In this document: in pieces, positions 15,749 through 42,742 of the stretch
Numbering within the stretch: position 1 is the stretch's first letter
Layout of the letters: every line of letters starts with the position of its first letter
IMG/VR virus record: IMGVR_UViG_3300002835_000007
Coordinates: 62,001 to 126,000 of that record
DNA length: 64,000 bases
Direction: 5' to 3' (one strand)
Translations under genes and position numbers: made by a program
The notes under the pieces: generated by a model
Databases searched by the model: none
Told to the model about the DNA's origin: nothing
What the model saw: only the letters and a program-made list of their open reading frames with translations

Positions 15749-16019
15749 TTACCACAAAAACGTGCATAGTAAGTCAGCCCAGCCCAGTAAAAATATTGGC
15801 ACAAGTTATTGCCCCTACTTAAAAAAGTAAGGGTATAAATTTATGCACCAAATCTCGTGGAAAGGGTGTGCAAATATAATATGTCAAATTTCACTTTGTC
15901 ATAAGCGTTAAAATTAATATTTAAATTTCAGTATACAAATGTAAGCATAATATTTTAATCTACCAAACTTTTTTGCAATTTATAATCATTCTAAATAAGG
16001 GTTGTTAAAAAAAGTTTAG

Positions 16020-16082
16020 GGTAGGTTGGAGTCTACTCTTCTGAAACTTGTTAAGTCAGCACGTATCTCTTTCAAACCTACA
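16020..16082 (-). ncRNA. dispersed sRNA-like element copy 1
   Basis: AGAGUAGACUCC core, CUGA...UCAG hairpin, promoter TTAG-N20-TACATTTG on minus strand. Confidence 0.6.
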
Positions 16083-16294
16083 ATACAAATGTAGGTATAA
16101 TAAATTTAATATCCTAATAAAAAAAATTTTTTTATTAATTATTTTTTTATTATATTACACACGCACATATGTACACGTGTACATTTATAGAATAGTGGTA
16201 TTAAAATTTTTTTTAATTATTTTTTATAAAGTAGTAGGATATTAAAAAAGTTTATATATCTTTGTAGGGTATTAATCAATTAAAACAATTACAT

Positions 16295-17011
16295 ATGAGT
16301 TTGGTATTTAAACACAAAGACACTATTCAAGTTGTTACGTTAGCAACAACAAAGAATGACAAAATTGAATCTAATAAGAAACGTAAGATAGTACAAACGT
16401 ACACGTTTTCTTATAAGCAATTTGAGTTAGTTAAGAAACGTTTTGAAACGAATGAAGCAATTGGCATGAAAAACTTTTTTAGTAACGCAGATAGCAATTG
16501 TTTGGATTGTCCTTTCAATTCTTATGGCAAATGTTATACACATAAATTTAATCAATACGTTGGTTTTATTTCATCTTTAAAAAGTGTATTTAGAAAGTTT
16601 GGTAGTATAGACAATATACCTAACTTTGATATTTCAATGTTAGACAAAGTTACCAAAATGAGCAAAGGTACTTATGTACGTTTCGGAACGTATGGTGAAC
16701 CAAGTTTGCACCCAATTGAATTAATTCGTTCTATGGTAAAAGTATGCGACAATTGGACGGGTTATACGCACCAATGGAATAAAACTAATTTAGGTGATTA
16801 TTTTATGGCAAGTACGCATACAACAAGTGAGCAACAAAGTGCTGAAATTTTAGGTTATAGGTCGTTTGTAGCAACTGAAAATAAGTTAGGGTATGTTGGT
16901 TGCCCAGCGAGTAAAGAAATGGGTTATAAGTCGAGTTGTAGTGCTTGTAATTTATGTAGTGGAAAGTTAGGAACTAAAACAAATAAAAGTATAGAAATTA
17001 TCCTACATTAA
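16295..17011 (+). CDS. Cys-rich conserved phage protein (possible Fe-S/metal-binding, Gp88-like)
   Basis: CLDCP...CY, RFGTYGEP, TGYTHQW, CPAS...CSACNLC. Confidence 0.6.
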   Translation: MSLVFKHKDTIQVVTLATTKNDKIESNKKRKIVQTYTFSYKQFELVKKRFETNEAIGMKNFFSNADSNCLDCPFNSYGKCYTHKFNQYVGFISSLKSVFRKFGSIDNIPNFDISMLDKVTKMSKGTYVRFGTYGEPSLHPIELIRSMVKVCDNWTGYTHQWNKTNLGDYFMASTHTTSEQQSAEILGYRSFVATENKLGYVGCPASKEMGYKSSCSACNLCSGKLGTKTNKSIEIILH

Positions 17012-17111
17012 TGTAGGGTAATTTTTTTTAAAACTTTTTATATAAAGTAGTAGGAAATTAAAAAAGAATGTTTATATTTGTAATGTATTAATCAATTAAA
17101 TAAAATAAATT

Positions 17112-17471
17112 ATGGGACGTTATTATTCGGGTGACATTGAAGGAAAGTTTTGGTTTGCACTACAATCTTCGGATTGTGCAGATAGGTTTGGTGTAAGTGG
17201 ACAACAACCAAACATATTAGAGTACTATTACGAAGAAAGTGATTTAGAAGGTGTGGAAGAAGAAATTGCTAATATTGAGCAAAGTTTGGGTGAACAAATA
17301 AAAGTCATAGAAGACTTTTTTAGAACAAACAATGGTTACAATGATAGTATGTTGGCAGAGGCAAATATTACCACAAGTGAATTAAGTGATTACGCAGATT
17401 TATGTTTGGGTATACAAATAAGGGATTGTATAAAAGAAAATGGTGCTTGTCGTTTTGACGCAGAATGTTAA
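17112..17471 (+). CDS. conserved phage hypothetical protein
   Basis: MGRYYSGDIEGKFWFALQSSD; own promoter. Confidence 0.75.
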   Translation: MGRYYSGDIEGKFWFALQSSDCADRFGVSGQQPNILEYYYEESDLEGVEEEIANIEQSLGEQIKVIEDFFRTNNGYNDSMLAEANITTSELSDYADLCLGIQIRDCIKENGACRFDAEC

Positions 17472-17527
17472 AAAATTATCCCCTACTAAAATAGTAGGGG
17501 TTTTTGTTTTTAATTTTTATTTTTTTT

Positions 17528-17592
17528 ATATGGACGTGACGGAGTCTAGTCTTCCATTCCCACGGCACGTATCGATTATCAATCATCTACAA
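17528..17592 (-). ncRNA. dispersed sRNA-like element copy 2
   Basis: CCGU-GGGA-AUGG hairpin + AGACUAGACUCC; promoter CTTG-N20-TACATTTG. Confidence 0.65.
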
Positions 17593-17742
17593 TACAAATG
17601 TAGAAATAATAAATTAGATATGCAAGAAAAAAGTGATTAAAAATAAAAATAATTTTTTTTTCATTATTTTATATAAAAAGTTTGGAAATTAAAAAAAAAG
17701 CGTTACATTTGTAATGTATTAATAATCTAAAAAACAAATAAG

Positions 17743-18627
17743 ATGAACACACAAGAAAAAGTACAAGAAATTTTAAAGTCTAATGGATTAGATTTTACAA
17801 TTGAAAAAGCACCTATGATGGCTTTAAATTCTAATGGTATCTATGTACCAAGTGAGTATTTCGGTTTGATTAATTCAAGCACGAATGAAGTGATTAACAC
17901 CGTAAAAGAGGGTTATACGGTATCTCAAAACGAAGAGGTTGTTGAGTTGGTTATGCGTGGAATTGAACCTTTCGGAAACGATATTCAAGTTACCAAAGGT
18001 GGTGCGTTGAATGGTGGACGCAAAGTGTTTTTACAACTTGCTATCAATGGTGACGGCAAAGTTAATGGTGACACTATTAAGAAGTATATTACTATCGTGG
18101 ATAGTAATGACGGCAGTACGGGTCTATCGGTAGGTATTGGTGATTTAACTATGAGTTGCAGTAACCAATTTTTTAAGTTCTACAAAAGTGGACAATCTAA
18201 ATTTCGTCATACGGCAAGTTTGGAACGTAGAATCAAAGAAATTCCTTTCCTTATTGAAACGGCTTTATCTGAATCATTAAGACAAATTGAAATCTACAAT
18301 CAATTTGCAAGTACGCAAGTTTCACGTGATTTGGCACACAAAATGGTTAAACACTTATTAGGGTTTGACAAAGTGTATACAAGTGTAAAAGACTTGTCAG
18401 ATAAGTCTACACGTAGTATAAACAAAATGGATGCTTTATACAACGCTATTGAACGTGAAATGAATAGCAAAGGTGACACGTTGTGGGGTTTACATAGTGG
18501 AATTACATATTACACTACACACGAATTGTCAGCACCAAAACGTGACAATGGTAAAGTTGAAACTTTGTTACAAGGAACGGGTTACAATATGAACCAAGCA
18601 AGTTTGGAATTTGCTTTAAATTACTAA
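17743..18627 (+). CDS. DUF932 (DUF945/LGT_TIGR03299-like) domain protein
   Basis: LDFTIEK.P, Y.V.QNEE, L.GGRKVF, S.DGS, C.NQ, RHT. Confidence 0.75.
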   Translation: MNTQEKVQEILKSNGLDFTIEKAPMMALNSNGIYVPSEYFGLINSSTNEVINTVKEGYTVSQNEEVVELVMRGIEPFGNDIQVTKGGALNGGRKVFLQLAINGDGKVNGDTIKKYITIVDSNDGSTGLSVGIGDLTMSCSNQFFKFYKSGQSKFRHTASLERRIKEIPFLIETALSESLRQIEIYNQFASTQVSRDLAHKMVKHLLGFDKVYTSVKDLSDKSTRSINKMDALYNAIEREMNSKGDTLWGLHSGITYYTTHELSAPKRDNGKVETLLQGTGYNMNQASLEFALNY

Positions 18628-18738
18628 CAAAGTTACAAGGGGGTTATCAACACCCCCTTGTAAATAACTTTATTTGCAAAGGTCGAATTTATTTTGTACC
18701 TTTGCAAATTTTTTTCTTATATGGTAAAAAAAATATAA

Positions 18739-18800
18739 GGTAGGTTGGAGTCTACTCTTTCAAGATTTCCCTCGACCCGTTTCGGTTATCACCACCAACA
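18739..18800 (-). ncRNA. dispersed sRNA-like element copy 3
   Basis: UCGAGG-GAAA-UCUUGA hairpin + core; promoter TTTG-N20-TACCTTTG. Confidence 0.65.
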
Positions 18801-18932
18801 AAACAAAGGTAGGGATAATATATTTAAAAAACAAACTTTTGTTGCATAAAAAAAAATAATTATTTTCTCACAAAATAGTTGCAGAATTAAAAATAATGTT
18901 TATCTTTGTAGGGAACAATAAAACAAAACACA

Positions 18933-19472
18933 ATGAAAAATTTAAATGACGTAAGATTAATGGCAGAAACATTAATGACAAAACAATTCACGTTTAACAC
19001 GTACCATGGGGTTTATACATTGAGTGGTGAACAATTAGGTTATACGTTTAAGTTTGATAGTGCAAAACGTAGATTTGGTTGCTGTAGTTATGGTAAAAAA
19101 ACTATTGGTTTATCTATGCCACTATGTAATGAAAATTTAGATAAAATAGACACAAAGATTACTGACACTATGTTGCACGAATTGGCACACGCATTTTGTG
19201 TTCACGTGTATGGTGTAAGGGACGGAAGAGGTCATGGGTACAATTGGCAACATATTGCAAAACAAATTGGTTGTGACGCTAAAAGATGTTTTAGTAGTGA
19301 TAGTGTTAATTTACCTAAATCAAAATATACTTTGTTATGTGAGAGTTGTGGTAAAGAAACACCAAAACACAAAGTGATTAGAAAGACTTATGCTTGTGCT
19401 AAATGTTGTGATGAACATAACAACGGAAAATTCAGTTATGATTATCAATTAAAATTAGTTACGAATTATTAA
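18933..19472 (+). CDS. SprT-like zinc metalloprotease
   Basis: RFGCC, HELAH, GHG..W, C-terminal CxxC...CxxC. Confidence 0.85.
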   Translation: MKNLNDVRLMAETLMTKQFTFNTYHGVYTLSGEQLGYTFKFDSAKRRFGCCSYGKKTIGLSMPLCNENLDKIDTKITDTMLHELAHAFCVHVYGVRDGRGHGYNWQHIAKQIGCDAKRCFSSDSVNLPKSKYTLLCESCGKETPKHKVIRKTYACAKCCDEHNNGKFSYDYQLKLVTNY

Positions 19473-19477
19473 AAAAG

Positions 19478-19510
19478 ATTTGCATAAGTGAAAACTTATG
19501 CTTATCTTTG
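19478..19510 (+). promoter_or_regulatory. promoter with hairpin-forming spacer (representative of a family in 19-39 kb)
   Basis: TTT-GCATAAG-tgaaaa-CTTATGC-TTATCTTTG; same sequence near 22609, 23870, 34067. Confidence 0.75.
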
Positions 19511-19532
19511 ATTAAACAAAACAATAAAAGTT

Positions 19533-19763
19533 ATGAAAGATTTATTTGAAACACCAGAGTTGATACCAAACGAAGTACAAGCAATATTGGAATCATTTGA
19601 TGAGGATAGTGGAAACACCTATTTTGAGTTAGATAGGATATTGAGTGAGATAGAACCATTGGGTTATACCTTTGATTACTATTTGGACGCAGAACCATAT
19701 GGGTTAAGACCTATGGGTATGGAATTGGAAGAGTTAGAGGGTTGGGAACATATTAATGATTAA
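19533..19763 (+). CDS. hypothetical acidic protein
   Basis: DLFETPELIP...GYTFDYYLDAEPY. Confidence 0.75.
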   Translation: MKDLFETPELIPNEVQAILESFDEDSGNTYFELDRILSEIEPLGYTFDYYLDAEPYGLRPMGMELEELEGWEHIND

Positions 19764-20025
19764 TGTTATGAAAATAGTTAAAAGTTGTTTACGTAGTACT
19801 GACGATATAAAATACGAGAGGGTATTAGAAACAAGTACACACATTTATTTTTATCCAATGGGCGACCACAAAGATAAAAAATTATTTGCTAAAAAACATA
19901 ATAGGGTTATGAATCTAATTGCCGAGGGTGATTATGTTGATAATGAGATAATGGAAATTTTTGCAAGTGGGAATTATAGTTGGGTAAGTAAGAAATTTGA
20001 AAATAAATTTGGAAAATTGAAATAG
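19756..20025 (+). CDS. hypothetical protein
   Basis: overlapping ORF. Confidence 0.65.
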   Translation: MINVMKIVKSCLRSTDDIKYERVLETSTHIYFYPMGDHKDKKLFAKKHNRVMNLIAEGDYVDNEIMEIFASGNYSWVSKKFENKFGKLK

Positions 20026-20063
20026 TTTATTTATCTTTGTTGAAACAATTAAAAACAAATATT

Positions 20064-20903
20064 ATGAGAAATGAATTTAACAATTTAGTAGAAACTTTAA
20101 AACGTTGGGACTTGTATCAAATAGGTGATGAAGTTGATATGGCGTTGACAGATTTGTCTGATAAGATAGCAGAAGTTGAAAAACGTATTGAATGTGTTAA
20201 ACGTACTAATGTTGATAGTCACGAGATACTATTTACTAATCAAGTTAAATTGGAAGAAAGTATTGGGTATGATAATGTAGAGATACTACAAAGAAGTGTT
20301 ACTGATATTAACATTGCATTAGATTTAACCATTAATGAACCAATAGAGTGTAATTGGTATGGTTTATTCGAAGAACCAAAAGAAGAAATAGAGGATAAAT
20401 TTAAACCTAGAAGTGTAGCAGAATATGTTGCAACATTACCCAAGGAAGAACCAAAGGTATTAATACCAAAAGATAGTATTGTTGAGTGGAAAGAAACAAG
20501 ACAATATTATAGTGTTAATGGTGGTGCTAAAGCGAGAGTAACCGAAGACTATACAACGGAACACGAAAGTAACGATAATTGTGTTAAAGTTGAATGGTTG
20601 GATGAAAAAGCAAATAACCAACAAAATGGTGGCTATTTTAGAGATATGTTTAAAGAAGACTTTGAGTTACCAAGTGTACCAACTTTTTTATGTTATTCAG
20701 ATGATAACCATAATATTGTAAAAGACATTATTGCGAAGTTAAAAGTAATTGATGTTGACGGAGAAACTATGCAGTATATCTTAAAGGAAGTTGGTATGGA
20801 AGACCAAATGTTAAGGCAACTAATAATGAGTAGTACTGAAAGTAATACAAAAGATTTGTTGGAAGAGAAACGAATTTTGAGTAACCAAGGTAAATTAGTT
20901 TAA
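20064..20903 (+). CDS. hypothetical protein
   Basis: start moved to ATG downstream of promoter. Confidence 0.75.
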   Translation: MRNEFNNLVETLKRWDLYQIGDEVDMALTDLSDKIAEVEKRIECVKRTNVDSHEILFTNQVKLEESIGYDNVEILQRSVTDINIALDLTINEPIECNWYGLFEEPKEEIEDKFKPRSVAEYVATLPKEEPKVLIPKDSIVEWKETRQYYSVNGGAKARVTEDYTTEHESNDNCVKVEWLDEKANNQQNGGYFRDMFKEDFELPSVPTFLCYSDDNHNIVKDIIAKLKVIDVDGETMQYILKEVGMEDQMLRQLIMSSTESNTKDLLEEKRILSNQGKLV

Positions 20904-20993
20904 AATAAAATTAAAAAGATTGGATGAATGTTATTGTTTATCCAATCTTTATTCTTATATTTGTTAAACAAACCAATTAAAACTTTAGAACCT

Positions 20994-21188
20994 ATGGATT
21001 ATAGTATGTATTTATTTAGCAACCTTATCAAATTTTATGACAAGGAATTTGCTGACGCTTGTTATGACGAGCAATGGGATGATTTGCCAAGTTTATATGA
21101 TGAGTATGACAAAAGCAAATTCAATGTTGACACCAAAGGTGAATACGAATGTATGGAAAATTTCTTAAAAGATAAGTACAACAAATAA
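20994..21188 (+). CDS. hypothetical protein
   Basis: start moved to ATG 20994. Confidence 0.65.
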   Translation: MDYSMYLFSNLIKFYDKEFADACYDEQWDDLPSLYDEYDKSKFNVDTKGEYECMENFLKDKYNK

Positions 21189-21264
21189 TTTAATAATAAT
21201 CCAATTTATATTTGGTAGATTGGATTATTATTCTTATATTTGTTAAACATTAAAAATAAAGATT

Positions 21265-21702
21265 ATGGGAAGTTTTAGTTGGAACAAAGCAGATGAATTA
21301 ACGAACACTGAAAATGTTGCTTATGGTACACCTTTTAAATTCTTAATACCAAAAGAATTTGGTGGTGGGTTTATCAAAGATTACTATCAAGATTATGGTG
21401 AACTAGGAACAAAAGAAATTAGTGGTGAACCTAAATACGATATGTATGAACTATTAGCATTTTGGAACAATGCAGAGGATTTGAAATTTGAGGGTGAATA
21501 TCCATTGATGAAACAAATTGATGAACATACTGATTACAATAGAAGTAAAGGTATTGACATTGGTTGTTACGATGAACAAATATTAAAACTTAAATACCCT
21601 TTAAAATTAGTTTCAGCTTCATTCAAAGGTACGTATGAAGATTTGGAGACTTGTAGTTTAGGTGACCCCGACCAAGGGTTTTTTCCAAGAAGAAGAAATT
21701 AA
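21265..21702 (+). CDS. conserved phage hypothetical protein
   Basis: MGSFSW...Y.DYG...D.YELLA.WN...DPDQG. Confidence 0.75.
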   Translation: MGSFSWNKADELTNTENVAYGTPFKFLIPKEFGGGFIKDYYQDYGELGTKEISGEPKYDMYELLAFWNNAEDLKFEGEYPLMKQIDEHTDYNRSKGIDIGCYDEQILKLKYPLKLVSASFKGTYEDLETCSLGDPDQGFFPRRRN

Positions 21703-21785
21703 AAATAATTTAAAAATAACCTATCAAATATTTGGTAGGTTATTTTATTTTTACTATATTTGTATTGTAATCAAAAACAAACATT

Positions 21786-22202
21786 ATGAAAACTAAAAGA
21801 GAATTAGCAGAAAAACAAATTGAGTTACAAAACAGAGTTAATGCAGTAGCAAGTATTAATATTGTAACGTGTGGAAATTGTGGTAGTGTATTATTACACG
21901 ATAGAATGGATTCTGAAATTGAATGTGCGTGTTGCAAGTCAGTAATGGATTTATCTGATTGTCCCGATTTATGGTATGAGGGTTGCCAAAATAATAGTGA
22001 GTTTGACGAAGAAGAAATCTTAACAAAACAAATTAGTGTTGAAGACGTTGTAAGGGTTGCTATGGATTTAAAAATGAATCCGAGTATTGCAGAGATTAAC
22101 GAAGTATTAAAATACTACGATAGTGAAGCAGAGGAAGACAAAACGGCAACGTGGGAATTGATTGTGGAGAACTTATTGTATAATTGTGTTGCACCAAAAT
22201 AA
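21786..22202 (+). CDS. zinc-ribbon protein
   Basis: VTCGNCG...ECACC. Confidence 0.7.
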   Translation: MKTKRELAEKQIELQNRVNAVASINIVTCGNCGSVLLHDRMDSEIECACCKSVMDLSDCPDLWYEGCQNNSEFDEEEILTKQISVEDVVRVAMDLKMNPSIAEINEVLKYYDSEAEEDKTATWELIVENLLYNCVAPK

Positions 22203-22283
22203 TTTAAAATAAAATAACAAAAGATTTGGATAATCGAAATATTATCCTTATCTTTGTTTCACAAACAAATTAAAACTAATATT

Positions 22284-22592
22284 ATGAATGACATCGCAAA
22301 ATTAAAAAGTTTAATATCTGAAGTTAAAGATATTGATAGACCAAAGTTTGACAGAGTATACAATGAAGTACTTTTTCCAAGAATGGTTAACGTGGCAGAA
22401 AAATGGAAAAAAAATGAATTGTCCATTGGTAGTTATCAAAATGATGATACACACAACAAAGTAGTTGGTGAATTATTTGATGATAGCAATCTACAAAGAT
22501 TGGTTGAAACCAAAATGAAACCTTACCTTGAAGAAAAAGGATTCAAAGTTGTTATTTGCAGTCCGAGTTATTATGTTTATATTCGTTGGTAA
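22284..22592 (+). CDS. hypothetical protein
   Basis: own promoter; start moved to 22284. Confidence 0.7.
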   Translation: MNDIAKLKSLISEVKDIDRPKFDRVYNEVLFPRMVNVAEKWKKNELSIGSYQNDDTHNKVVGELFDDSNLQRLVETKMKPYLEEKGFKVVICSPSYYVYIRW

Positions 22593-22667
22593 AATAAATT
22601 AAAAAAAGATTTGCATAAGTGAAAACTTATGCTTATCTTTGTTTCACAAACAAAAACAATAAGAGTT

Positions 22668-22931
22668 ATGGCAACAATGACAAAGACAGAATTTTTCGCA
22701 AAGTATGGTGGTGGATTGGTAGTGGCAGAAGAGGATAGTGTAGAATATGGTGACTATCTTTTTTTACACCCCGAAGAAATTGATAGGGTGAAAGAATTTG
22801 ATACGGAAGAGTATCAAGTTGTATCGGTACACGAAACCGAGGACGGAGAAGACATCGTTGATATGGGCGACATTGACTATGGTACACAACCATACAAATA
22901 TGGTTATTTTGTAATTGAAAAAGGAATTTAG
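22668..22931 (+). CDS. hypothetical acidic protein
   Basis: own promoter; start moved to 22668. Confidence 0.7.
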   Translation: MATMTKTEFFAKYGGGLVVAEEDSVEYGDYLFLHPEEIDRVKEFDTEEYQVVSVHETEDGEDIVDMGDIDYGTQPYKYGYFVIEKGI

Positions 22932-22934
22932 ATT

Positions 22935-23261: not shown

Positions 23262-23292
23262 CCCACTTTTTTTGTGCGTGTAAAAAAATAAA

Positions 23293-23343
23293 AGGCACGT
23301 TGGAGTCTACTCTTCCATTCCCACGGCACGTCTAACTTGACAA
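23293..23343 (-). ncRNA. dispersed sRNA-like element copy 4
   Basis: CCGU-GGGA-AUGG + core; promoter CTTG-N20-AATCTTTG. Confidence 0.6.
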
Positions 23344-32669: not shown

Positions 32670-32690
32670 TGTCACCTTTTTTTTATGGTT

Positions 32691-35353: not shown

Positions 35354-35431
35354 AAAAAGTTAAAAAAGGTTTGGAATTGTAAAAACAATTCCTTACCTTT
35401 GATAAAAGAAATCAATTAAAAAACAAACATT

Positions 35432-35659
35432 ATGAAAAAAGAATTATTTATTTTGGCAGTATTAGGTATAGTAGGTCAAATTGTTTCACTAGTAGGTATA
35501 TTTTTCTATTCAGAAACCAATGACGCATTAATGATAAACTTATGGAGTTTTCTAACCTTTGGGTGTTTATCGGCTGTTGTGTTGTTTGTAGACAAGAAAC
35601 AAACTGAAAACAAGATGAAAGAAGAATTTAAAGATATAGAAGAATTAGAAGAAAATTAA
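35432..35659 (+). CDS. small two-TM membrane protein
   Basis: two hydrophobic helices; own promoter. Confidence 0.65.
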   Translation: MKKELFILAVLGIVGQIVSLVGIFFYSETNDALMINLWSFLTFGCLSAVVLFVDKKQTENKMKEEFKDIEELEEN

Positions 35660-35870
35660 AATATAGTAGGAAAGGGTTTATATGAGAGGAAAATACTCTG
35701 CTGAACCTCGTAGACTTGGTAACGATACATCATTGCATAATTAGTTCCCCTTTCCGTATTGTTTATCACTAATTATGCTTTGACAAACCTTTCATATTGT
35801 AAATGACTTAGAGGAATGTTTCGTTAGAGGTGTTGTTGGGAATAGGGTTTACCTATTCCCAATTCCTATT
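35660..35870 (+). ncRNA. candidate pseudoknotted ncRNA
   Basis: three 8-10 bp long-range helices plus terminal hairpin; no ORF. Confidence 0.4.
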
Positions 35871-35899
35871 TATACAACTTTGTTTTTTCATTTTTATTT

Positions 35900-35964
35900 T
35901 GTTCACGTATGGACGTGTTGGAGTCTACTCTTCTACTCTCGCAGCACGTACCTTAATCGTACAT
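35900..35964 (-). ncRNA. dispersed sRNA-like element copy 9
   Basis: CUGC-GAGA-GUAG + core; promoter GTTG...TATCTTTG. Confidence 0.65.
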
Positions 35965-36100
35965 AACAAAGATAGTAATAATATTGACTTGTGCAACAAA
36001 AAAAGTAAAAAAAAATAATTTATTTATTTTTCACAATATAGTAGGAAATTAAAAAAGAATGTTTATCTTTGTAAGGTATTAATCAATAAAACAAATTACA

Positions 36101-36721
36101 ATGGGTTACACAACTGATTTTAGTGGTAGATTTGAACTTAACAAGGAGTTAAGTCCAAAGATGGAACAATACTTAAAATTGTTCAACGAAACACGCAGAA
36201 TGGAAAGAAACACTGATGAAGTGTTTGGAGTACAAGGTGAGTTTTACGTATTTGGTGGTGGAAGTTTTGGACAAGACCACGAAGACAATGTAGTAGATTT
36301 TAATGAGCCACCAAGCACTCAACCAAGTCTTTGGAATCAATGGACACCTAGCGATGACCGAATGGGTATTGAGTGGGATTGTGGTGAGAAGTTTTATAAC
36401 TATACTGAATGGTTAGTTTATCTTATTCACAAAATTCTAGCACCGAATGGTTATGTCCTTAATGGAGTGGTAGAATATAGTGGTGAGGAAGTTGGTGATG
36501 TTGGTGAAATAGTTGTTGTTGATAATAGAGTATTTGTCAGAGAGAAATACCAAGATGGCGACAATGGGGAAAGTACACCACAAAACGCACAAAAGTTTGG
36601 CAGAGTTAATGGCAACTATGTTTATATCAAAGACTTTATGAGAACTGATGTAGTGTTGATTTTAGATGGTACTGATAACGAATTACCTAATGGGGTTGTA
36701 AAGTTATTAGAAAATAACTAA
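36101..36721 (+). CDS. conserved phage hypothetical protein
   Basis: MGYTTDFSGRF, QPSLWNQW, EKFY.Y.EWL.YLI, GY.LNG. Confidence 0.8.
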   Translation: MGYTTDFSGRFELNKELSPKMEQYLKLFNETRRMERNTDEVFGVQGEFYVFGGGSFGQDHEDNVVDFNEPPSTQPSLWNQWTPSDDRMGIEWDCGEKFYNYTEWLVYLIHKILAPNGYVLNGVVEYSGEEVGDVGEIVVVDNRVFVREKYQDGDNGESTPQNAQKFGRVNGNYVYIKDFMRTDVVLILDGTDNELPNGVVKLLENN

Positions 36722-37177
36722 AACATTTTAAAAAAAGATTTGGATAATCGAAAGATTATCCTTATCTTTGTTTCACAAACAAATTAAAACAAAAAGTTAT
36801 GTTAGGCAAAATCGTTTATTTAGGAATCTTATTAGGAGGATTAGCAGTAATCAAATTAGTGTGTAATTATTTAGATAAAAGAAATGAAATTTAAAGAAAT
36901 AACCTTAACCCAGCACGAAATGCAACAAGCATTAAAGAGTAGTGTTCACAAGTCTAAAAAAGCGTTTCAACGCAAAGATAAACATAAAAAGAATTATATT
37001 AACAAGTTAATGCAAGAGGATTATGTATGATAAAGAAATAATGTTGATTGAAATCTATTATGGGGTTTCAATCAACGCAAAAAACTAAATTGTGTTTGTT
37101 TAGTGTTTTGATTATAACGAGGAAGTGGTTGCCGAATGGTTGCCACTTTTTTTATGCAGTAACGCACACACGAAACA

Positions 37178-37230
37178 TATACACGCAACGGAGTCTACTC
37201 TTCTACTCTCGTAGCACGTCTTACTGACAT
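37178..37230 (-). ncRNA. dispersed sRNA-like element copy 10
   Basis: CUAC-GAGA-GUAG + core; promoter GTTG...TATCTTTG. Confidence 0.6.
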
Positions 37231-37367
37231 AACAAAGATAGAAATAATTTTGATATATCCAACACAAAAATGAAAATAATTTAAAAAAAATTAAATGCTA
37301 ATTATAGTATGTTGTGGCAACAAGATTCAATGCTTATATTTGTAGTATAACTTTAAAACAATATATT

Positions 37368-37607
37368 ATGGAATGCACATTAGAAAATTTAGAGAGAGTA
37401 TTTAAAATCATTATTGAGCAACACGCAGACAATAATGAACACGCAGAATTTGACGATGAAAGTGATTTAGTTGATGTAGTCAAAAGAGTAGTTGAATGGT
37501 TGGATGAAGAACCTACATTTTGTTGTCAAAATTGTGGTGGTGGGTTTACACGTGATGAAATGGTATTTGGTGATGATGTAGATTTATGTAAAGATTGTGC
37601 AAAATAA
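37368..37607 (+). CDS. zinc-ribbon protein
   Basis: CQNC...CKDC; start moved to 37368. Confidence 0.65.
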   Translation: MECTLENLERVFKIIIEQHADNNEHAEFDDESDLVDVVKRVVEWLDEEPTFCCQNCGGGFTRDEMVFGDDVDLCKDCAK

Positions 37608-37667
37608 ATTTGCATAATCAAAACATTATGCTTATCTTTGTTAAACAAACAATTTAAAACTTATATT

Positions 37668-37991
37668 ATGTCAAGCAAAAACTTAAACAAAGATTTAGAA
37701 CAATTAGAAAAACAAGTTTACCACTACTTTAATGAGTTGTTGGAGAAACAAGAAGAAATAGTAATCTTTGATGAATGTGATTTAGAACACGACACACCCG
37801 ATGATTACCTTGAAATGCGTAATGATATTACGGGAAACGTGTTTGATGTCCACCCACTAAAAGTAACCCAAAATGGAATACTTGTAGTTGAAGCAGACGG
37901 AAGTTTTGTAAGACACTTGATTAAGTTGCAAGATTTATCAAGCACACAAGACAAAATTACCCTAATAGAATTAATGGAAAATAGTTTGTAA
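37668..37991 (+). CDS. hypothetical protein, tandem paralog 1
   Basis: VIFDE.DLE.DTPD.YLE.R...TGNVFDVHPLKV shared with next gene. Confidence 0.75.
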   Translation: MSSKNLNKDLEQLEKQVYHYFNELLEKQEEIVIFDECDLEHDTPDDYLEMRNDITGNVFDVHPLKVTQNGILVVEADGSFVRHLIKLQDLSSTQDKITLIELMENSL

Positions 37992-38069
37992 AAAACTATA
38001 AAAAGATTTGGATAAGTGAAAACTTATCCATATCTTTGTTGTATAAATAAACAATTAAAATAAACTAAA

Positions 38070-38423
38070 ATGAGAATAAGTGCTTTAAAAAGAGATATAG
38101 ATGTTTTAAAAACACATATCCAAATGACATTCGAGGAAATGTTATATCAACAAAAAGAATTTGTTATCTTTGATGAAAAAGATTTAGAAAATGACACACC
38201 CGATAATTACCTAGAAATTAGAGATAAAGAAACGGGCAACGTATTTGATGTACACCCACTAAAAGTTCTTAAAGTTGGTAATTACTACGATATTGAAGTA
38301 GTAACGGCAGACGGAAAATTTACAAAACATTCAATTAAAATGTGGGATTTATCAATAGAGGATAGAATTAATTTAATTGAATTAATGGACAAATGTTTGG
38401 TAGATAATGATAACGAAATATAA
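38070..38423 (+). CDS. hypothetical protein, tandem paralog 2
   Basis: same motif as 37668-37991. Confidence 0.75.
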   Translation: MRISALKRDIDVLKTHIQMTFEEMLYQQKEFVIFDEKDLENDTPDNYLEIRDKETGNVFDVHPLKVLKVGNYYDIEVVTADGKFTKHSIKMWDLSIEDRINLIELMDKCLVDNDNEI

Positions 38424-38485
38424 ACAAATAAACTTGCATAAGTCAAAACTATTCACTATCTTTACGGAAACAAATAATTAATACT

Positions 38486-38869
38486 ATGTATACTTTAATC
38501 GACACAAAGAAAAACAAAGAACTTGCAACATTAAATTCTAAACAAGAATTGATTGACAAAGTTAATTTAATCGCTAATGACGATAAATTTAGAATCGCAC
38601 CAATCAACACTATTGAAGATTGTTTTGAGTATATCAATCAATATACATTGGACTATGATTTAGTCAAAGATAGTGAAGTTAATTCGTTTATCGAAACTTA
38701 TGGTATTGAAGTTGATGAAAATGAATCAGACCACTATGTTGAACTAATGATGGACGACCACAAATGTATAAAATGGAAAGGTAAAGAATATTATATAGGT
38801 GAAAATCTAAATTTAGATGAAGTCGAAGATAGTGTTTATATGATAATAGCATATTCACTACACGTATAA
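38486..38869 (+). CDS. hypothetical protein
   Basis: own promoter. Confidence 0.7.
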   Translation: MYTLIDTKKNKELATLNSKQELIDKVNLIANDDKFRIAPINTIEDCFEYINQYTLDYDLVKDSEVNSFIETYGIEVDENESDHYVELMMDDHKCIKWKGKEYYIGENLNLDEVEDSVYMIIAYSLHV

Positions 38870-38952
38870 AATAAATTAAAATAAATGGTACTATCGTTTG
38901 GTAGTACCATTTATATTTACTATCTTTACATAAACAAATAAACATAAACACA

Positions 38953-39249
38953 ATGAGAACAATTACTGAAAAAGCAATCGAAAAGTTTTTAAATGCTGAA
39001 ACTTTTAAAAATGGTAACACAAGTGTAGAAGTTTTGCCTAACGTAACAATACTAAAACTATTTGGCAACGCAATCGCTTATCAATACAACGACCCCGAAA
39101 GAACCTTATCAATTACTAATTGTGGGTATGAAACGGCAACAACAAAAGAAAGGTTAAATGGTTTACCTAACGTAAAAATAAATCAAACCAAAGGTAAATG
39201 GTTTCTGAATGATGTTGAATGGGACGGAAATTTAATTGATGTAAATTAA
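38953..39249 (+). CDS. conserved phage hypothetical protein
   Basis: NT.V...L.GN.IA...G..T.TTKERLNGL. Confidence 0.75.
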   Translation: MRTITEKAIEKFLNAETFKNGNTSVEVLPNVTILKLFGNAIAYQYNDPERTLSITNCGYETATTKERLNGLPNVKINQTKGKWFLNDVEWDGNLIDVN

Positions 39250-39404
39250 TAACTAAATGGTAGGTGCGACCTATGTACATATTTCTGTACATTGGTTGCC
39301 ACCACACCCCCTAATTTAATCAATTAGTTGTTATCAAATAAAAAATATAATGTTTGAATAATAATACTTACAATAAGTAAATTATAAGACAAAAAAAAAT
39401 GAGA

Positions 39405-39665
39405 CTACTTTGGTAGTCTCATTCTTGGGTTGGTATACCCAGTGAGTTCGTTAAAGCCCCACTTGATGTGAGTCTTTTCGCCATAAACGGCAGACGAACT
39501 TTTGTATGGTTGGTGAACGTAATCGTTCAACATTTCCCATTTGGTCATTCCCATACCATAGCCGTTATAACGATATGTTCTGAAGAATGCAACGCCATCT
39601 TGACGTATACCAACTTGAACTGAACGTCCATACGTATCAGTTCCGTGAAAACAATTTGCTTCCAT
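39405..39665 (-). CDS. hypothetical protein
   Basis: start moved to MEANC; minus-strand promoter at about 39723-39755. Confidence 0.7.
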   Translation of the reverse strand: MEANCFHGTDTYGRSVQVGIRQDGVAFFRTYRYNGYGMGMTKWEMLNDYVHQPYKSSSAVYGEKTHIKWGFNELTGYTNPRMRLPK

Positions 39666-39999
39666 AACAAAAAGAAAAAAAATAAGTAAGAAAAAGAACT
39701 TTTGTCCCTCATTTGGACGATACAAAGATAAACATAATTTTTAAATAACCAAACATTTTTTAATCTTTTTTTATTTTTTTTTATTCCTATCTAATCTTAT
39801 TTATAACATTAATCTTTATACTATTCTTATTCTTTTTTTGCTTGTATTGTTGCTTGTAATAAACTTTAAATACTAAACCAATACATAATACCAAAACAAC
39901 TTTAAAACGTCTTAAAACGAATTAAAATAAGAGCAAAAAATAATTTAAAAATAATTCACTTTTTTCTTGCATATCTAAAATCTAATTACGATATTTGTA

Positions 40000-40068
40000 T
40001 TGTCAATGATTGATAATCGAGACAAGTTGCTAACCAAAGCAAAAGACTAGACTCCGACACGTCTATAC
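40000..40068 (+). ncRNA. dispersed sRNA-like element copy 11 (inverted)
   Basis: UUGCU-AACCAA-AGCAA + AA + GACUAGACUCC; promoter CTTG...GATATTTG. Confidence 0.6.
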
Positions 40069-40125
40069 TTTTTTAACGTATGCCAATAAAAAAAAGAGTT
40101 CATTTAATGAACCCTTTTCAGTCGG

Positions 40126-40545
40126 TTAAAGACTTGCACAAGTCGGACCTAACCCACGTTCGATGGATTGTGCGTCCGTTAACGTGCGTCCACAACGTAT
40201 GCAATTGCCCGTATGCATAACTTGAACCTTCTCATCCAACAAGTCGAACTTGCTTTGTTCAACCCTTTCAAGCACCCAACAAATTGCTGTTGCCGATGGC
40301 GAGTTAACCACTTGCCCTTTTTGGTAAATCTTACCCTTGAAATAAGACCCCAAACGAACGAATTTTTGGTACTCTTGTTCAACGCTAATATGCGTGTACC
40401 AATTGCCCTTAAATTTAGAACGAGAGATAGCATACGTGTAGTCTTTGCCCGTAGCAATAGACTTAATAGTGAAATCAGAACCACTATTGTTTTTTTCAGC
40501 CTTGATAACTGAAAAAAGAGCCGAAGATGAAATAATGTGTGACAT
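40126..40545 (-). CDS. DUF6011-like zinc-finger protein
   Basis: CIRCGRTLT...SIERGLGPTC. Confidence 0.75.
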   Translation of the reverse strand: MSHIISSSALFSVIKAEKNNSGSDFTIKSIATGKDYTYAISRSKFKGNWYTHISVEQEYQKFVRLGSYFKGKIYQKGQVVNSPSATAICWVLERVEQSKFDLLDEKVQVMHTGNCIRCGRTLTDAQSIERGLGPTCASL

Positions 40546-40681
40546 AAGGAAAAAATTTAAATGAATAACTTATTACAAAGATAATACTTTTTTTCATTCC
40601 CACAATACCTTAACGAAAAAAAAAATAAAATTATTTTTAATAATTGTTTGCATATATCATTTCTATTATCTATCTTTGTTT

Positions 40682-40756
40682 TGTCAATGATTGATAGTCG
40701 AGACAAGTCGCTAAGCAAAGTGAGAGAGTAGACTCCGACACGTCCATACGTGAACG
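40682..40756 (+). ncRNA. dispersed sRNA-like element copy 12 (inverted)
   Basis: UCGCU-AAGCAA-AGUGA + GA + GAGUAGACUCC; promoter TTTG-N20-TATCTTTG. Confidence 0.65.
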
Positions 40757-40783
40757 AACTATACTAAATAAAAAAGGGGATTT

Positions 40784-41002
40784 TTAAACCCCCAATTTTT
40801 CAAAGATAGGACGACTAATTTCGTTTCTAATAAGCATAGGTATTAGATACTCAAATAAGTCGTCAGATTCAATCTTTAGACGTTCATACTTAACTTTTGG
40901 TATGTCAGCCCTAACGTCATTTCCAACTTGTTCGGCAAAGAATTTTTCACCTTCCCTAACTAATAGACAATTTCCAACTTGTCTTACAACTACACGTAAC
41001 AT
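40784..41002 (-). CDS. hypothetical protein
   Basis: own minus-strand promoter. Confidence 0.65.
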   Translation of the reverse strand: MLRVVVRQVGNCLLVREGEKFFAEQVGNDVRADIPKVKYERLKIESDDLFEYLIPMLIRNEISRPIFEKLGV

Positions 41003-41132
41003 AAAGAACGATTTTGAATTACCCTACAAAGATAACATTAATTTTGATTCCCACAATACCCTAACCAAAAAAAAATTAATATAAACGAAAAAAGTCCATA
41101 AGGTATAACCCTATGGACAGATTTCTGTACAT

Positions 41133-41456
41133 TTAGTACTCAACTTCAACGTCACGTGCTTGTGCGTGCACGTATTCCAAGAACTTGTCGTCATTCAAGA
41201 CGATAGGTTCGTGCCACACGATTTCGTGTTCGGTATACGTATACCGATACCCCTCGTTAGACTCGTCTTGTAGCAGACGTTTGAAAGCGTTTATTGAGCG
41301 TTCCTCGTCATACATAAGGTAATCAACATTAAGGTTGACTTGAAAGATTTTACCACCTTTCTTTTTCCAATGTTGTGGACATTCCCCTTGACCATCCCAC
41401 GTGTGAGCAGCATAGTTTTCCTCAACTTGTGCGTAAATGTTTACCAATGTTTTCAT
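41133..41456 (-). CDS. conserved phage hypothetical protein
   Basis: Q..ENY.AH.WDG.GECPQ.WK.KGG. Confidence 0.75.
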   Translation of the reverse strand: MKTLVNIYAQVEENYAAHTWDGQGECPQHWKKKGGKIFQVNLNVDYLMYDEERSINAFKRLLQDESNEGYRYTYTEHEIVWHEPIVLNDDKFLEYVHAQARDVEVEY

Positions 41457-41658
41457 AACAAAAAAGTATTAAAAAATAAATAAAAAAAGAACTAACGCCC
41501 AACCGAAGTACATATCATATCCTCAATTGAACAATACAAAGATAGGGATAAATTTTAAATAACCAAAACTTTTTTCACTTTTTTTTTTCAAAGTTATTAA
41601 CACTAAATTGTTAATAACTTTTTTTAAAAAAAAACTTGCATATTAAAAAAATAAAACC

Positions 41659-41709
41659 CAGGTTGGAGTCTACTCTTCCATTCCCACGGCACGTACCTTA
41701 ATTGTACAC
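41659..41709 (-). ncRNA. dispersed sRNA-like element copy 13
   Basis: CCGU-GGGA-AUGG + core; promoter CTTG-N20-TATATTTG. Confidence 0.6.
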
Positions 41710-41873
41710 TACAAATATAGGAAGGATAAATTTAATATGCAAGCAAAAGTTATTAACAATTCAATTTTTTTTATTGTTAATAACTTTGAGTGAATTATTT
41801 TTAATTTTTTGTTGCAATAGTCAATTTAATGTGTAACTTTGTCAAAGTTATTAATCATTAAAACTTTTAAATT

Positions 41874-42458
41874 ATGAAAACGCAAACACAAAACAACAAC
41901 GTAGTAGCAGTAGGTAAAACAATCAAAGGTACAACCTTTGTAGGTACTACATATAGAAACGCACAAGGCGAATTAAGTAAACAACTTATCGTTAGTGGTA
42001 TTAGTTACGAAAATTGTTTAATGAATGATTTTAATTCATTACAAGCAAATCAAACTACTATCTTTGAAAAGTTGGAAAAAACTTATTCTATCGACTTAAT
42101 TACTTTGGCTTACAATAACCTTTTTTCAAGCCTTGAAAAAAGATTATCTAACCCAGAAACGAAAGCAAAATTATTGGCTGAAAAAGATAGTACAATAGTA
42201 CGTTCACAAGCCCAAATTGAGGCTTATACGCACCTTGCAAAAGGTATTAAAGTACATAACGAAACAAACGAAATTCATGTGTTTGGTTTAGTAGTTAAAA
42301 AACGTGTTTTGGAAGCAGTCGAATACAAAGAAACGAAAAGCAAAGAATTGACAATCGTACAAAACAAAATCAAAAAACTTTGCGACTTTAAGCAAAGCAA
42401 ATATAAAACTTTCATCTTTCAGCAAGGCGAATTTAAAATGCAAGGATTGACACTATAA
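41874..42458 (+). CDS. conserved phage hypothetical protein
   Basis: 194 aa; followed by GAAA-loop terminator at about 42462-42491. Confidence 0.75.
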   Translation: MKTQTQNNNVVAVGKTIKGTTFVGTTYRNAQGELSKQLIVSGISYENCLMNDFNSLQANQTTIFEKLEKTYSIDLITLAYNNLFSSLEKRLSNPETKAKLLAEKDSTIVRSQAQIEAYTHLAKGIKVHNETNEIHVFGLVVKKRVLEAVEYKETKSKELTIVQNKIKKLCDFKQSKYKTFIFQQGEFKMQGLTL

Positions 42459-42742
42459 CAAAAGAAAGTACCGAAAGGTACTTTTTTTTTTGCCTATACA
42501 TTTTTAATTACAAAACACGTTTTAATTAGTTTTAAGACGTGTTTTTGTTGTTAGGTATACAAAGATATTACTTTTAATAGAAAGTTGCTTAAAACGGCTA
42601 ATTACCCCCTATACGGCAGTCCTCCCTATGTACCCCCTCCTTGTAACCCCCCTCCGTTAGCCCTCCCGTATGTTGGGTGTATGTGGGGCTTGATGCTGTT
42701 CACGAAATTTTTTTTGGGAAAATTTTTTGACTTTATTTTTAG

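What the first reader, a model, noticed from the sequence alone, without database searches (positions are those of the whole stretch)
15900..42600. ~27 kb early region purged of specific short motifs: candidate first-injected DNA or long terminal repeat
Seen (manual counts): ACCAG/CTGGT occurs ~13 times in 1-7450, but I found it once (~19553) in 16.0-42.5 kb. CCAG/CTGG is ~26 versus ~12, and AGCT ~11 versus one (~21615). Unusual synonymous codons take their place despite the AT bias: Pro-Glu/Asp as CCC GAx (e.g. 24660, 27581, 37797, 39094) and Thr-Gly as ACG GGx (e.g. 16757, 26149, 33704). Established: first-transferred DNA of T5 and T7 avoids restriction sites, and SPO1 keeps its host-takeover genes in the terminal repeat. 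Inference: this block meets host nucleases before protection is in place, or must stay free of a motif the phage itself modifies. It probably holds anti-defence genes.
Basis: partly seen in the sequence, partly recalled or inferred. Interest (0 to 1): 0.7.

Follow-up and report, generated by a model that had tools for sequence, protein, structure and literature searches.

The report
Restriction-site-free early block, probable terminal repeat
A 26.8-kb block of about 60 small early genes in an uncultivated freshwater jumbo phage has been almost completely cleared of at least eight short restriction-type DNA motifs that are common elsewhere in the genome, and it is present at twice the depth of its flanks, so it is most likely a long terminal repeat that enters the host first.

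Summary
Window 15.8-42.7 kb is the only part of the 206-kb contig that has nearly lost AGCT (1 found, about 66 expected), CATG, ACAG/CTGT, CCAG/CTGG, CTAG, GGCC and CCGC. Both strands are depleted and both borders are sharp. The depletion survives codon-preserving shuffles, and compensating synonymous words (CACG, CCCG, ACGG) are enriched.

The whole contig also lacks GATC, CCGG, GCGC, CGCG, CGWCG, CTGCAG and CTTAAG, so avoidance has two tiers.

The block holds 62 small genes, 28 strict Bacteroidota-type host promoters and 13 copies of a block-specific repeat. A relative that is about 70% identical at protein level and syntenic across the border shows the same edge. There AGCT and CATG are depleted but ACAG is not.

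Unitig depths in four metagenomes fit a step to about 2x (1.9-2.35). The steps lie within about 0.4 kb of the compositional borders, and the assembly graph does not branch there. This is the signature of a collapsed long direct terminal repeat.

Best reading: a T5/SPO1-style leading early module. Two caveats remain. The large terminase is T4-like, a type that normally packages by headful, and no raw reads were available. Anti-defence content is plausible but not shown.

The parts
15785..42695 (+). Motif-purged block of about 26.9 kb with 62 called genes, 54 of them on the + strand, mean length 112 aa. It is nearly free of AGCT, CATG, ACAG/CTGT, CCAG/CTGG, GGCC, CCGC, GATATC and CTAAG. Its depth is about 2x that of the flanks.
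15305..16294 (.). Left-border non-coding stretch of about 1 kb. It has iteron-like GTAAA(T/A)RG repeats at 15561-15613 and a 20-bp near-perfect palindrome, AATGTTTCACGTGGAACATT, at 15731-15750. Both are conserved in a relative that is about 70% identical at protein level. The first copy of the block-specific repeat unit follows at 15920-16290. This stretch is a candidate terminus or packaging signal (inference).
16295..17011 (+). First gene of the block, 238 aa, of the DUF7227/GP88 family. It has 761 close homologues and invariant Cys clusters. Its fold has no informative match. In cos mycobacteriophages the homologue is the third gene from the right physical end.
17743..18627 (+). DUF932 / TIGR03299 'phage/plasmid-like protein', 294 aa, 94% identical in relative L015.
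18933..19472 (+). SprT-like zinc metalloprotease domain protein, 179 aa.
23476..23853 (+). Protein related to mycobacteriophage L5 gp82, 125 aa. The match is just under the Pfam cut-off.
24201..25040 (+). DUF1281_C (Api92-like) protein, 279 aa, net charge -36.
16028..41678 (+). Thirteen copies of the core GGAGTCTACTCTTC (up to 2 mismatches), at 16028, 17541, 18747, 23302, 27786, 31731, 32717, 34562, 35920, 37190 and 41665 on the + strand and at 40042 and 40723 on the - strand. None occurs elsewhere in the 206 kb. Each copy lies between a bidirectional terminator and a conserved opposing promoter, so each may be a small antisense RNA gene.
16598..40680 (+). Twenty-eight strict Bacteroidota-type promoters (TTTG-N17-21-TAnnTTTG) on the + strand. 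Many have a hairpin in the spacer, giving promoter/stem-loop cassettes like the T4-type PeSL.
39405..41456 (-). The only cluster of minus-strand genes in the block (86, 139, 53, 72 and 107 aa; the 139-aa protein has a DUF6011 domain). It is driven by minus-strand promoters at about 39753 and 41567.
41874..42458 (+). Last gene of the block, 194 aa, with no family match. It is followed by a terminator at 42468-42492.
42459..42851 (.). Right-border non-coding stretch. It has a C-rich segment (GTAACCCCCCTCC at 42643) and direct repeats at 42704-42728 and at 42745/42798. It is conserved in the 90%-identity relative L013. It is a candidate inner or outer boundary signal of the repeat (inference).

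Best explanation
The block is the early (immediate or 'pre-early') gene module of a large phage of a Bacteroidota host. It is most probably a 26.8-kb direct terminal repeat that assembly collapsed into one copy.

As the leading DNA, it is in the cell and must be transcribed by unmodified host RNA polymerase before any phage product can neutralise host restriction enzymes. Every recognition site in it is therefore lethal. Selection has removed such sites by synonymous substitution.

The rest of the genome keeps those sites because by the time it is exposed the corresponding enzymes have been disarmed. A second set of motifs is absent from the whole genome (GATC, CCGG, GCGC, CGCG, CGWCG, CAGG outside CCWGG, CTGCAG, CTTAAG). 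These would mark enzymes the phage cannot disarm.

Shown: the purge, its DNA-level nature, its borders, its conservation with a changing motif set, the promoter-dense early-gene architecture, and the roughly 2x depth.

Inferred: physical termini at the borders, ordered entry, and that early products inhibit restriction.
For: (1) Strand-symmetric, codon-controlled depletion with compensating synonymous words.

(2) It is the only such block in 206 kb, with borders defined to within 0.7 kb.

(3) Relative L015 is 55-96% identical at protein level and syntenic across the left border. It has the same edge about 0.3-0.9 kb upstream of the same first gene. AGCT is absent for 11.7 kb and CATG for at least 11.6 kb, but ACAG is not depleted. 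In orthologous genes ACAG+CTGT number 15 in L015 against 4 here, and 8 of the 14 L015-only sites differ synonymously.

(4) Among 18 loci from other phage lineages that carry the same first gene, 8 have a 4-mer depleted on the early side (GATC, CGCG, GGCC, CCGC, CATG, CCAG, AGGC). None has one depleted on the other side.

(5) A two-level model fits unitig depth in four runs with inside/outside ratios of 1.90, 2.35, 1.89 and 2.02 (R2 0.94-0.97). Non-circular estimates place the steps at 15584 and 16475 on the left and at 42730 and 43084 on the right. Unitigs cross both borders unbranched.

(6) There are 28 strict host-type promoters in the block against 0.45 expected, which is 47% of all + strand matches in 13% of the contig.

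(7) Homologues of the first gene lie 1-4 kb from the right physical end of cos mycobacteriophages and head a leftward array of small early genes.

(8) There is an experimental precedent that only sites in first-injected DNA matter (PMC12455610, which also cites T5 first-step-transfer DNA and EcoRI). The T5 record annotates its terminal repeat as first-step-transfer DNA.

(9) Very acidic small proteins, which could be DNA mimics, make up 13 of 62 genes in the block against 8 of 262 elsewhere.
Against: - The large terminase matches only T4-superfamily terminases (24-31% identity). It matches no T5-type or SPO1-type terminase. Its relatives package by headful into permuted genomes, and ordered entry would not apply to such genomes (argument in PMC12455610).
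- Depth comes from mean k-mer depths of assembled unitigs, not from reads. Edges are resolved only to about 0.5-2 kb, and no read pile-ups at termini could be examined.
- Flank depth varies between unitigs because strains are mixed. In two of the four runs the only wholly outside unitig is 478 nt long.
- The T5 A1-like gene is 41 kb outside the block.
- Host-type promoters also occur at lower density in the unpurged 0-77 kb of the contig.
- No known anti-restriction family was found.
- The contig is a fragment, about 58% complete by CheckV.
Confidence: 0.58

Rival explanations
1. The phage is a T4-like headful packager with a permuted genome and no fixed leading end. The block is an immediate-early hyperplastic region. 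It is purged because a cut there aborts production of the early products that would otherwise rescue or protect the rest of the DNA, or because heavily transcribed DNA is the most accessible. The 2x depth would come from co-occurring strains that share this block.
For: - The terminase large subunit, portal and major head protein are of T4-related types.
- Promoter/stem-loop cassettes like the T4-type PeSL flank small orphan genes (PMC2839356, PMC4122927).
- Strain heterogeneity is visible in the unitig graph.
Against: - A second strain diverging at the borders would create branches there. Unitigs cross both borders unbroken in all four runs, and the depth steps coincide with the compositional borders.
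- With about 500 AGCT sites elsewhere in the genome, removing about 30 gives no benefit unless the rest is protected in time or space.
- Other parts of the contig that carry early-type promoters (0-77 kb) are not purged.
Confidence: 0.2
2. The block must stay free of motifs that the phage itself targets. These could be sites of a phage-encoded modification that would hinder host RNA polymerase, or sites of phage nucleases used against host DNA.
For: - The nearest cultured relatives include Flavobacterium phage immuto, whose guanines are fully replaced by fdPreQ1 (PMC10516641).
- A T5 A1-like nuclease-family protein and a 661-aa nuclease are encoded in the contig.
Against: - No DNA methyltransferase of three major families, DpdA or QueC is present in the 206 kb.
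- Total genome-wide avoidance of GATC, CCGG, GCGC and CGCG argues that the DNA is not generally protected by modification.
- The purged set is dominated by classical type II palindromes, and the set differs between close relatives.
Confidence: 0.08
3. The block is a recent horizontal acquisition from a phage or plasmid with a different restriction history. Its composition reflects the donor.
For: - The block is gene-dense in orphan genes.
- A few of its domains (DUF932/TIGR03299 'phage/plasmid-like protein', SprT-like, DUF1281) are shared with plasmids and genomic islands.
Against: - The border, the gene order and the purge are shared with a relative at about 70% protein identity, and flank synteny is conserved.
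- GC content, the genome-wide tier of avoided motifs and the promoter type are the same as in the rest of the genome.
- The motif set has changed since divergence.
Confidence: 0.07
4. The pattern is an artefact of amino-acid or codon usage in small early proteins.
For: Part of the raw CCAG contrast is explained this way. Recoding the block's proteins with the codon usage of the rest of the genome predicts only about 14 CCAG.
Against: AGCT, CATG, ACAG, CTGT, CTGG and CCGC remain 3- to 27-fold below synonymous-shuffle expectation. The reverse-complement words are equally depleted on the coding strand.
Confidence: 0.02

Closest known systems
Bacteriophage T5 left terminal repeat, which is its first-step-transfer DNA
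   Same: - A long terminal repeat that carries pre-early genes and enters first.
- Restriction sites are tolerated elsewhere in the genome but not in this DNA.
- A non-coding, repeat-rich boundary (the injection stop signal) lies at the inner end.
- The repeat is about 8% of the genome in T5. Here it would be about 7.5% if the CheckV size estimate is right.
- A T5 A1 homologue is present in this genome (PMC12455610).
   Different: - The repeat is 26.8 kb here against 10.2 kb in T5.
- The terminase is T4-type, not T5-type.
- The A1-like gene lies outside the block.
- The purge is far more extreme. The T5 repeat still has 25 AGCT, 23 CATG and 26 GATC.
- The host is a Bacteroidota species.
- Two-step transfer has not been demonstrated.
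SPO1 host-takeover module in its terminal redundancy (from my own knowledge of Stewart and colleagues' work)
   Same: An array of many small genes inside a long terminal repeat. Each gene or pair has a strong host-sigma early promoter and a terminator.
   Different: No sequence homology was tested or seen. The host phylum and terminase family differ. SPO1 protects its DNA with hydroxymethyluracil rather than by site avoidance.
Early-injected region of Autographiviridae (Murciavirus), which determines sensitivity to a type I restriction system (PMC12455610)
   Same: Restriction acts at sub-genomic scale. Only motifs in the leading region matter. The leading region is variable and rich in candidate anti-defence genes.
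   Different: Those are about 40-kb T7-like podoviruses with short repeats and a single type I motif. Here there are at least 8 short motifs, mostly of type II kind, in a 27-kb block of a jumbo phage.
T4-type hyperplastic regions with PeSL promoter/stem-loop cassettes (PMC2839356, PMC4122927)
   Same: Small orphan early genes, each flanked by a composite of early promoter and stem-loop. The head and packaging genes are T4-related.
   Different: No region-limited restriction-site purge or 2x depth is described for these regions. T4-type genomes are permuted.
Leading regions of conjugative plasmids (PMC11541004, PMC13478746)
   Same: This is the first DNA to enter, with anti-defence genes concentrated there. 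Some domain families are shared with the block (DUF932/TIGR03299, SprT-like).
   Different: Plasmid leading regions were found not to be consistently depleted of short palindromes (PMC13478746). Here the depletion is nearly complete.

Membership tests
T5-like first-step-transfer terminal repeat | Long exact direct terminal repeat present twice per virion DNA | tested here: inconclusive
   Unitig depth is about 2x inside the block in four runs. The steps lie at the borders and there is no branching. No raw reads or termini were available.
T5-like first-step-transfer terminal repeat | Pre-early genes A1, A2 and dmp located inside the repeat | tested here: not met
   The A1-like gene (phrog_1745, E 3e-152; 31% identity to T5-like A1) is at contig 35449-37029, which is 41 kb left of the block. 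A2 and dmp were not identified.
T5-like first-step-transfer terminal repeat | Restriction sites absent from the repeat but present and tolerated in the rest of the genome | tested here: met
T5-like first-step-transfer terminal repeat | T5-type large terminase | tested here: not met
   All 2791 tblastn hits are to T4-superfamily terminases. No Demerecviridae appear in the rows listed.
T5-like first-step-transfer terminal repeat | Non-coding injection stop signal at the inner boundary, and two-step DNA transfer | not testable with these tools
   A repeat-rich, conserved non-coding stretch of about 0.4 kb exists at 42459-42851. Its function is unknown.
Restriction-site avoidance under selection | Under-representation relative to shuffles that preserve codons and amino acids | tested here: met
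Restriction-site avoidance under selection | Both strands or orientations depleted, with palindromic 4-6-mers prominent | tested here: met
Restriction-site avoidance under selection | Cognate restriction-modification systems present in the host | not testable with these tools
   The host is unknown. It is inferred to be a Bacteroidota species from the promoter type and from the nearest phage relatives.
T4-type hyperplastic region with PeSL cassettes | Composite early-promoter/stem-loop motifs flanking small variable genes | tested here: met
   Repeat families D1-D5 and D8 have the form TTTG-hairpin-TAnnTTTG. There are 28 strict promoters.
T4-type hyperplastic region with PeSL cassettes | Circularly permuted, headful-packaged genome | tested here: inconclusive
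   The terminase type favours this. The 2x depth step argues against it.
Known anti-restriction proteins (ArdA, ArdB/KlcA, Ocr) | Match to the family profile | tested here: not met
   PF07275, PF03230 and PF08684 give no match at E <= 0.1 in the 206 kb.

The most novel reading that the evidence does not exclude
A jumbo phage of Bacteroidota with a T4-type terminase nevertheless makes an exact 26.8-kb terminal repeat, which would be among the longest known. It uses this repeat as a T5-like first-step-transfer module. The conserved border elements (the palindrome at 15731-15750 and the C-rich repeats at 42.6-42.85 kb) would serve as terminus and injection-pause signals. The 13 block-specific small-RNA-like units would be part of the takeover programme. 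The two tiers of motif avoidance would then show directly which host restriction systems the phage's early proteins can and cannot neutralise. Leading DNA and anti-restriction capacity would become predictable from sequence alone in uncultivated phages.
Probability: 0.3. Interest if true: 0.78.

Novelty: new variant of a known kind. Interest (0 to 1): 0.6.

Why it matters
It is known from T5, and since 2025 from T7-like phages, that restriction acts hardest on the DNA that enters first. That knowledge rests on one or a few sites in cultured phages.

Here the principle has left a very large, sharply bounded footprint in an uncultivated jumbo phage. At least eight short motifs are erased from 27 kb, a different motif set is erased in a close relative, and a second tier of motifs is erased genome-wide.

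If the terminal-repeat reading holds, three things follow:
- Change-point scans for motif depletion could locate leading regions, genome ends and pools of candidate anti-restriction genes in metagenomic phages without culture.
- The contrast between the two tiers would give a sequence-only read-out of which restriction systems a phage can inhibit.
- T4-type terminases would be shown to be compatible with fixed long repeats.

Tried and rejected
- **Amino-acid or codon artefact.** Rejected by synonymous shuffles and recoding. It explains only part of the CCAG contrast.
- **First reading of the depth tables.** I first took them as uninformative strain noise. Refitting with the inside fraction of each unitig showed a consistent 2x step.
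- **Loose ends and contig ends near 15.45-15.97 kb as physical termini.** Rejected. Most of the ones checked are cross-links through 31-mer repeats inside the block.
- **Phage-encoded protection.** No C5, N4/N6 or D12 methyltransferase, DpdA or QueC was found.
- **Known anti-restriction families.** None found.
- **tRNA genes and Rfam families in the block.** None were found, apart from one MicX match below threshold.
- **PHROG, Pfam and NCBIfam scans of 30 block proteins.** Most have no family or no assigned function.
- **Structure of the first gene's product.** The model has pLDDT 79.5. Fold searches of PDB and AlphaFold DB matched only its own uncharacterised family.
- **Whole record of relative L015.** It is not held, so the right border of its block could not be seen.
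- **Nucleotide-level relatives among cultured phages.** None found.

Full report
**Source.** The window is bases 62001-126000 of a single 205,931-bp IMG/VR virus contig. The record is classed as linear and has no end repeats. CheckV estimates it as about 58% complete, so the genome is probably near 350 kb. The same sequence occurs in many lake and freshwater metagenomes. No cultured phage is close at nucleotide level.

**Observation.** Values are found versus expected from the flanks:
- AGCT 1 vs 66
- CATG 7 vs 83
- CCAG/CTGG 12 vs 106
- ACAG/CTGT 20 vs 104
- GGCC 0
- also CTAG and GCWGC

CACG, CCCG and ACGG are enriched. These are the synonymous replacements expected when CAT-G, CCA-G and ACA-G are avoided.

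In 5-kb bins over the whole contig this is the only such block. Both orientations of the non-palindromic words are depleted although almost all genes are on the + strand, so the constraint acts on double-stranded DNA and not on mRNA or codons. The density of the depleted words falls from about 10/kb to below 1/kb between 15784 and 16465. It recovers between 42276 and 42696.

**Controls.** I shuffled synonymous codons within each of the 54 + strand genes. This keeps the protein sequences and each gene's own codon usage. Found versus expected:
- AGCT 1 vs 27.6
- CATG 7 vs 29
- ACAG+CTGT 14 vs 68.5
- CCGC 0 vs 13.8
- CTAG 12 vs 28
- CCAG+CTGG 10 vs 22

Longer words are also depleted:
- CTAAG 1 vs 18
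- GAGAC 1 vs 14
- GATGC 2 vs 14
- CACTG 2 vs 13
- GATATC 0 vs 8.4

In the other 261 genes the same words have found/expected ratios of 0.8-1.5. Only the CCAG contrast is partly due to amino-acid usage.

**A second, genome-wide tier.** GATC, CCGG, GCGC, CGCG, CGACG/CGTCG, CTGCAG, GTCGAC, GCTAGC, CGTACG and CTTAAG do not occur at all in 206 kb. Among CDS, GATC is 0 against 290 expected. CAGG survives only inside CCWGG, at 45 against 423 expected. The phage is thus under unusually broad pressure to avoid restriction sites, and the block carries an additional tier.

**What the block contains.**
- There are 62 called genes with a mean length of 112 aa, against 214 aa elsewhere. Most have no family match.
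- The matches found are DUF932/TIGR03299 'phage/plasmid-like protein', an SprT-like metalloprotease, DUF1281_C, Kyano_Gp96, DUF6011 and a weak match to L5 gp82.
- The intergenic spacers carry the Bacteroidota promoter consensus TTTG-N17-21-TAnnTTTG. That this is the Bacteroidota consensus is my own knowledge. There are 28 strict matches on the + strand in the block against 0.45 expected, out of 60 + strand matches in the contig.
- Many promoters have a hairpin in the spacer. This resembles the PeSL cassettes of T4-type hyperplastic regions (PMC2839356, PMC4122927).
- Very acidic small proteins make up 13 of 62 genes, against 8 of 262 elsewhere.
- No ArdA, ArdB/KlcA or Ocr profile matches. Anti-defence content is therefore plausible but not shown.

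**Relatives.**
- The first gene (16295-17011, DUF7227/GP88 family) has 26 related IMG/VR loci and 761 close homologues.
- Relative L015 lies on a 246.8-kb contig and is syntenic on both sides of the left border at 55-96% protein identity. It has the same architecture: a copy of the block-specific repeat, then the first gene, then a promoter-dense array. Its purge starts at the same place. AGCT is absent from 8589 to 20311 and CATG is absent after 9101. ACAG is not depleted.
- In 6.4 kb of aligned orthologues, ACAG+CTGT number 15 in L015 and 4 here, and 8 of the 14 L015-only sites differ synonymously.
- Relative L013 is 90% identical in the block's last gene. It has the right border at the homologous place, and it tolerates a few GCGC.
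- In 18 more distant loci of about 60-kb phages at 35-42% GC, 8 have a 4-mer strongly depleted on the early side (GATC, CGCG, GGCC, CCGC, CATG, CCAG, AGGC). None has one depleted on the other side.
- A block-limited purge whose motif set changes with lineage is what lineage-specific restriction pressure predicts. It argues against recent horizontal acquisition.

**Terminal repeat.** Only assembled unitigs with mean k-mer depths were available. In all four runs, unitigs cross both borders without a break.

Unitigs wholly inside the block have about twice the depth of those wholly outside. Border-spanning unitigs have intermediate means in proportion to their inside fraction. A two-level fit gives inside/outside ratios of 1.90, 2.35, 1.89 and 2.02, with R2 of 0.94-0.97 against a flat model.

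Two runs have at least 3 kb of purely outside unitigs, so the levels can be set independently of the border-spanning unitigs. They give ratios of 1.91 and 2.04. The inferred step positions are 15584 and 16475 on the left and 42730 and 43084 on the right. The compositional borders are 15784-16465 and 42276-42696.

A second strain sharing only this block would force branches at the borders, and none is seen. Doubling of depth without branching is the expected picture for a direct terminal repeat of a linear genome collapsed by assembly. The apparent loose ends near the borders are mostly cross-links through short repeats inside the block.

**Positional evidence.** In cultured cos phages deposited from their physical ends, homologues of the first gene lie 1-4 kb from the right end. 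There they head a leftward array of about 20 small genes, for example in Piro94.

The left-border non-coding kilobase contains blocks conserved with L015. These include a 20-bp palindrome at 15731-15750 and iteron-like repeats at 15561-15613. The right border has a conserved C-rich and direct-repeat stretch. Either could be a terminus or boundary signal, but this is inference.

**Counter-evidence.**
- The large terminase (contig 131690-133456) matches only T4-superfamily terminases at 24-31% identity. These package by headful. PMC12455610 notes that avoidance in a leading region would be irrelevant for such phages.
- A clear homologue of T5 A1 exists, but it lies at contig 35449-37029, outside the block.
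- Early-type promoters also occur at lower density in the unpurged left 77 kb.

**Comparison with T5.** The T5 record annotates the terminal repeat at 1-10219 as first-step-transfer DNA, with a 1-kb injection stop signal at its inner end. That repeat is compositionally distinct but still has 25 AGCT, 23 CATG and 26 GATC. The purge here is much more complete and covers a block 2.6 times longer.

**Conclusion.** The most likely explanation is a long terminal repeat or leading early module, kept free of restriction sites because it is exposed before phage counter-measures act. This works like T5 first-step-transfer DNA and resembles the SPO1 host-takeover module in architecture. It is not a member of either lineage. 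The conflict with the terminase type and the lack of read-level termini keep confidence near 0.6.

Noticed in passing
whole contig (window 1-64000 and loci L001-L009): GATC, CCGG, GCGC, CGCG, CGACG/CGTCG, CTGCAG, GTCGAC, GCTAGC, CGTACG and CTTAAG are completely absent from 206 kb at 30% GC. CAGG/CCTG occurs only inside CCWGG (48 of 48 occurrences).
   Followed up: partly
window 16028-41678 (13 sites; alignment A1): A block-specific unit of about 300 nt occurs 13 times. Each has a bidirectional terminator, then a conserved GGAGTCTACTCTTC core, then a conserved opposing Bacteroidota-type promoter (TTGCATAT..TAtcTTTG). This suggests 13 small antisense RNA genes of about 80-100 nt. A 4-bp stem with a GNRA loop (on the antisense strand) shows compensatory changes. 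There is no Rfam family. The same core marks the block in relative L015.
   Followed up: partly
L003:3449-5026 (contig 35449-37029): A 526-aa homologue of the T5 A1 'DNA transfer protein' with a metallophosphoesterase domain. It is 31% identical to A1 of T5-like phages and 44-45% identical to proteins of Flavobacterium elemo and Maribacter phages. It lies outside the purged block.
   Followed up: partly
window 7459-12364 (- strand): Four adjacent minus-strand genes of 479, 331, 331 and 479 aa form one paralogous family (26-45% identity). They have no PHROG match. They sit just left of the block.
   Followed up: partly
window 59326-61839 (- strand): An 837-aa AAA+ protein annotated 'ATP-dependent protease' (phrog_4871, E 7e-253), which is unusual cargo for a phage.
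   Followed up: no
L002:9440-11056 (contig 25440-27059): A nicotinamide phosphoribosyltransferase (539 aa). It may serve NAD+ salvage, which could counter NAD-depleting host defences.
   Followed up: no
window 62668-63936: A thymidylate-synthase family protein of 423 aa, about 100 aa longer than the profile. It is the only stretch with nucleotide similarity to a cultured phage (Flavobacterium phage immuto, 71.5%).
   Followed up: no
window 16295-17011 and alignment A5: The first gene of the block belongs to a very abundant and unusually conserved phage family (DUF7227/GP88). The best 120 of 761 homologues are at least 56% identical. It has invariant Cys clusters (C69xxC72..C80..H83 and C203..C215xxC218xxC221) that suggest metal or Fe-S binding. 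Its fold has no informative match.
   Followed up: partly
window 37668-38423: Two tandem paralogous acidic genes of 107 and 117 aa, 53% identical. This is the only clear protein duplication inside the block.
   Followed up: no
L030, L035, L031 (IMG/VR contigs of about 57-64 kb, or partial (L031, 28.6 kb); 40-42% GC): Other phage lineages that carry the same first gene avoid further motifs over the whole fetched locus: CCAG is 0 in about 20 kb of L030, and AGCT and CTAG are 0 in about 21 kb of L035. They also show extra local dips next to that gene.
   Followed up: partly
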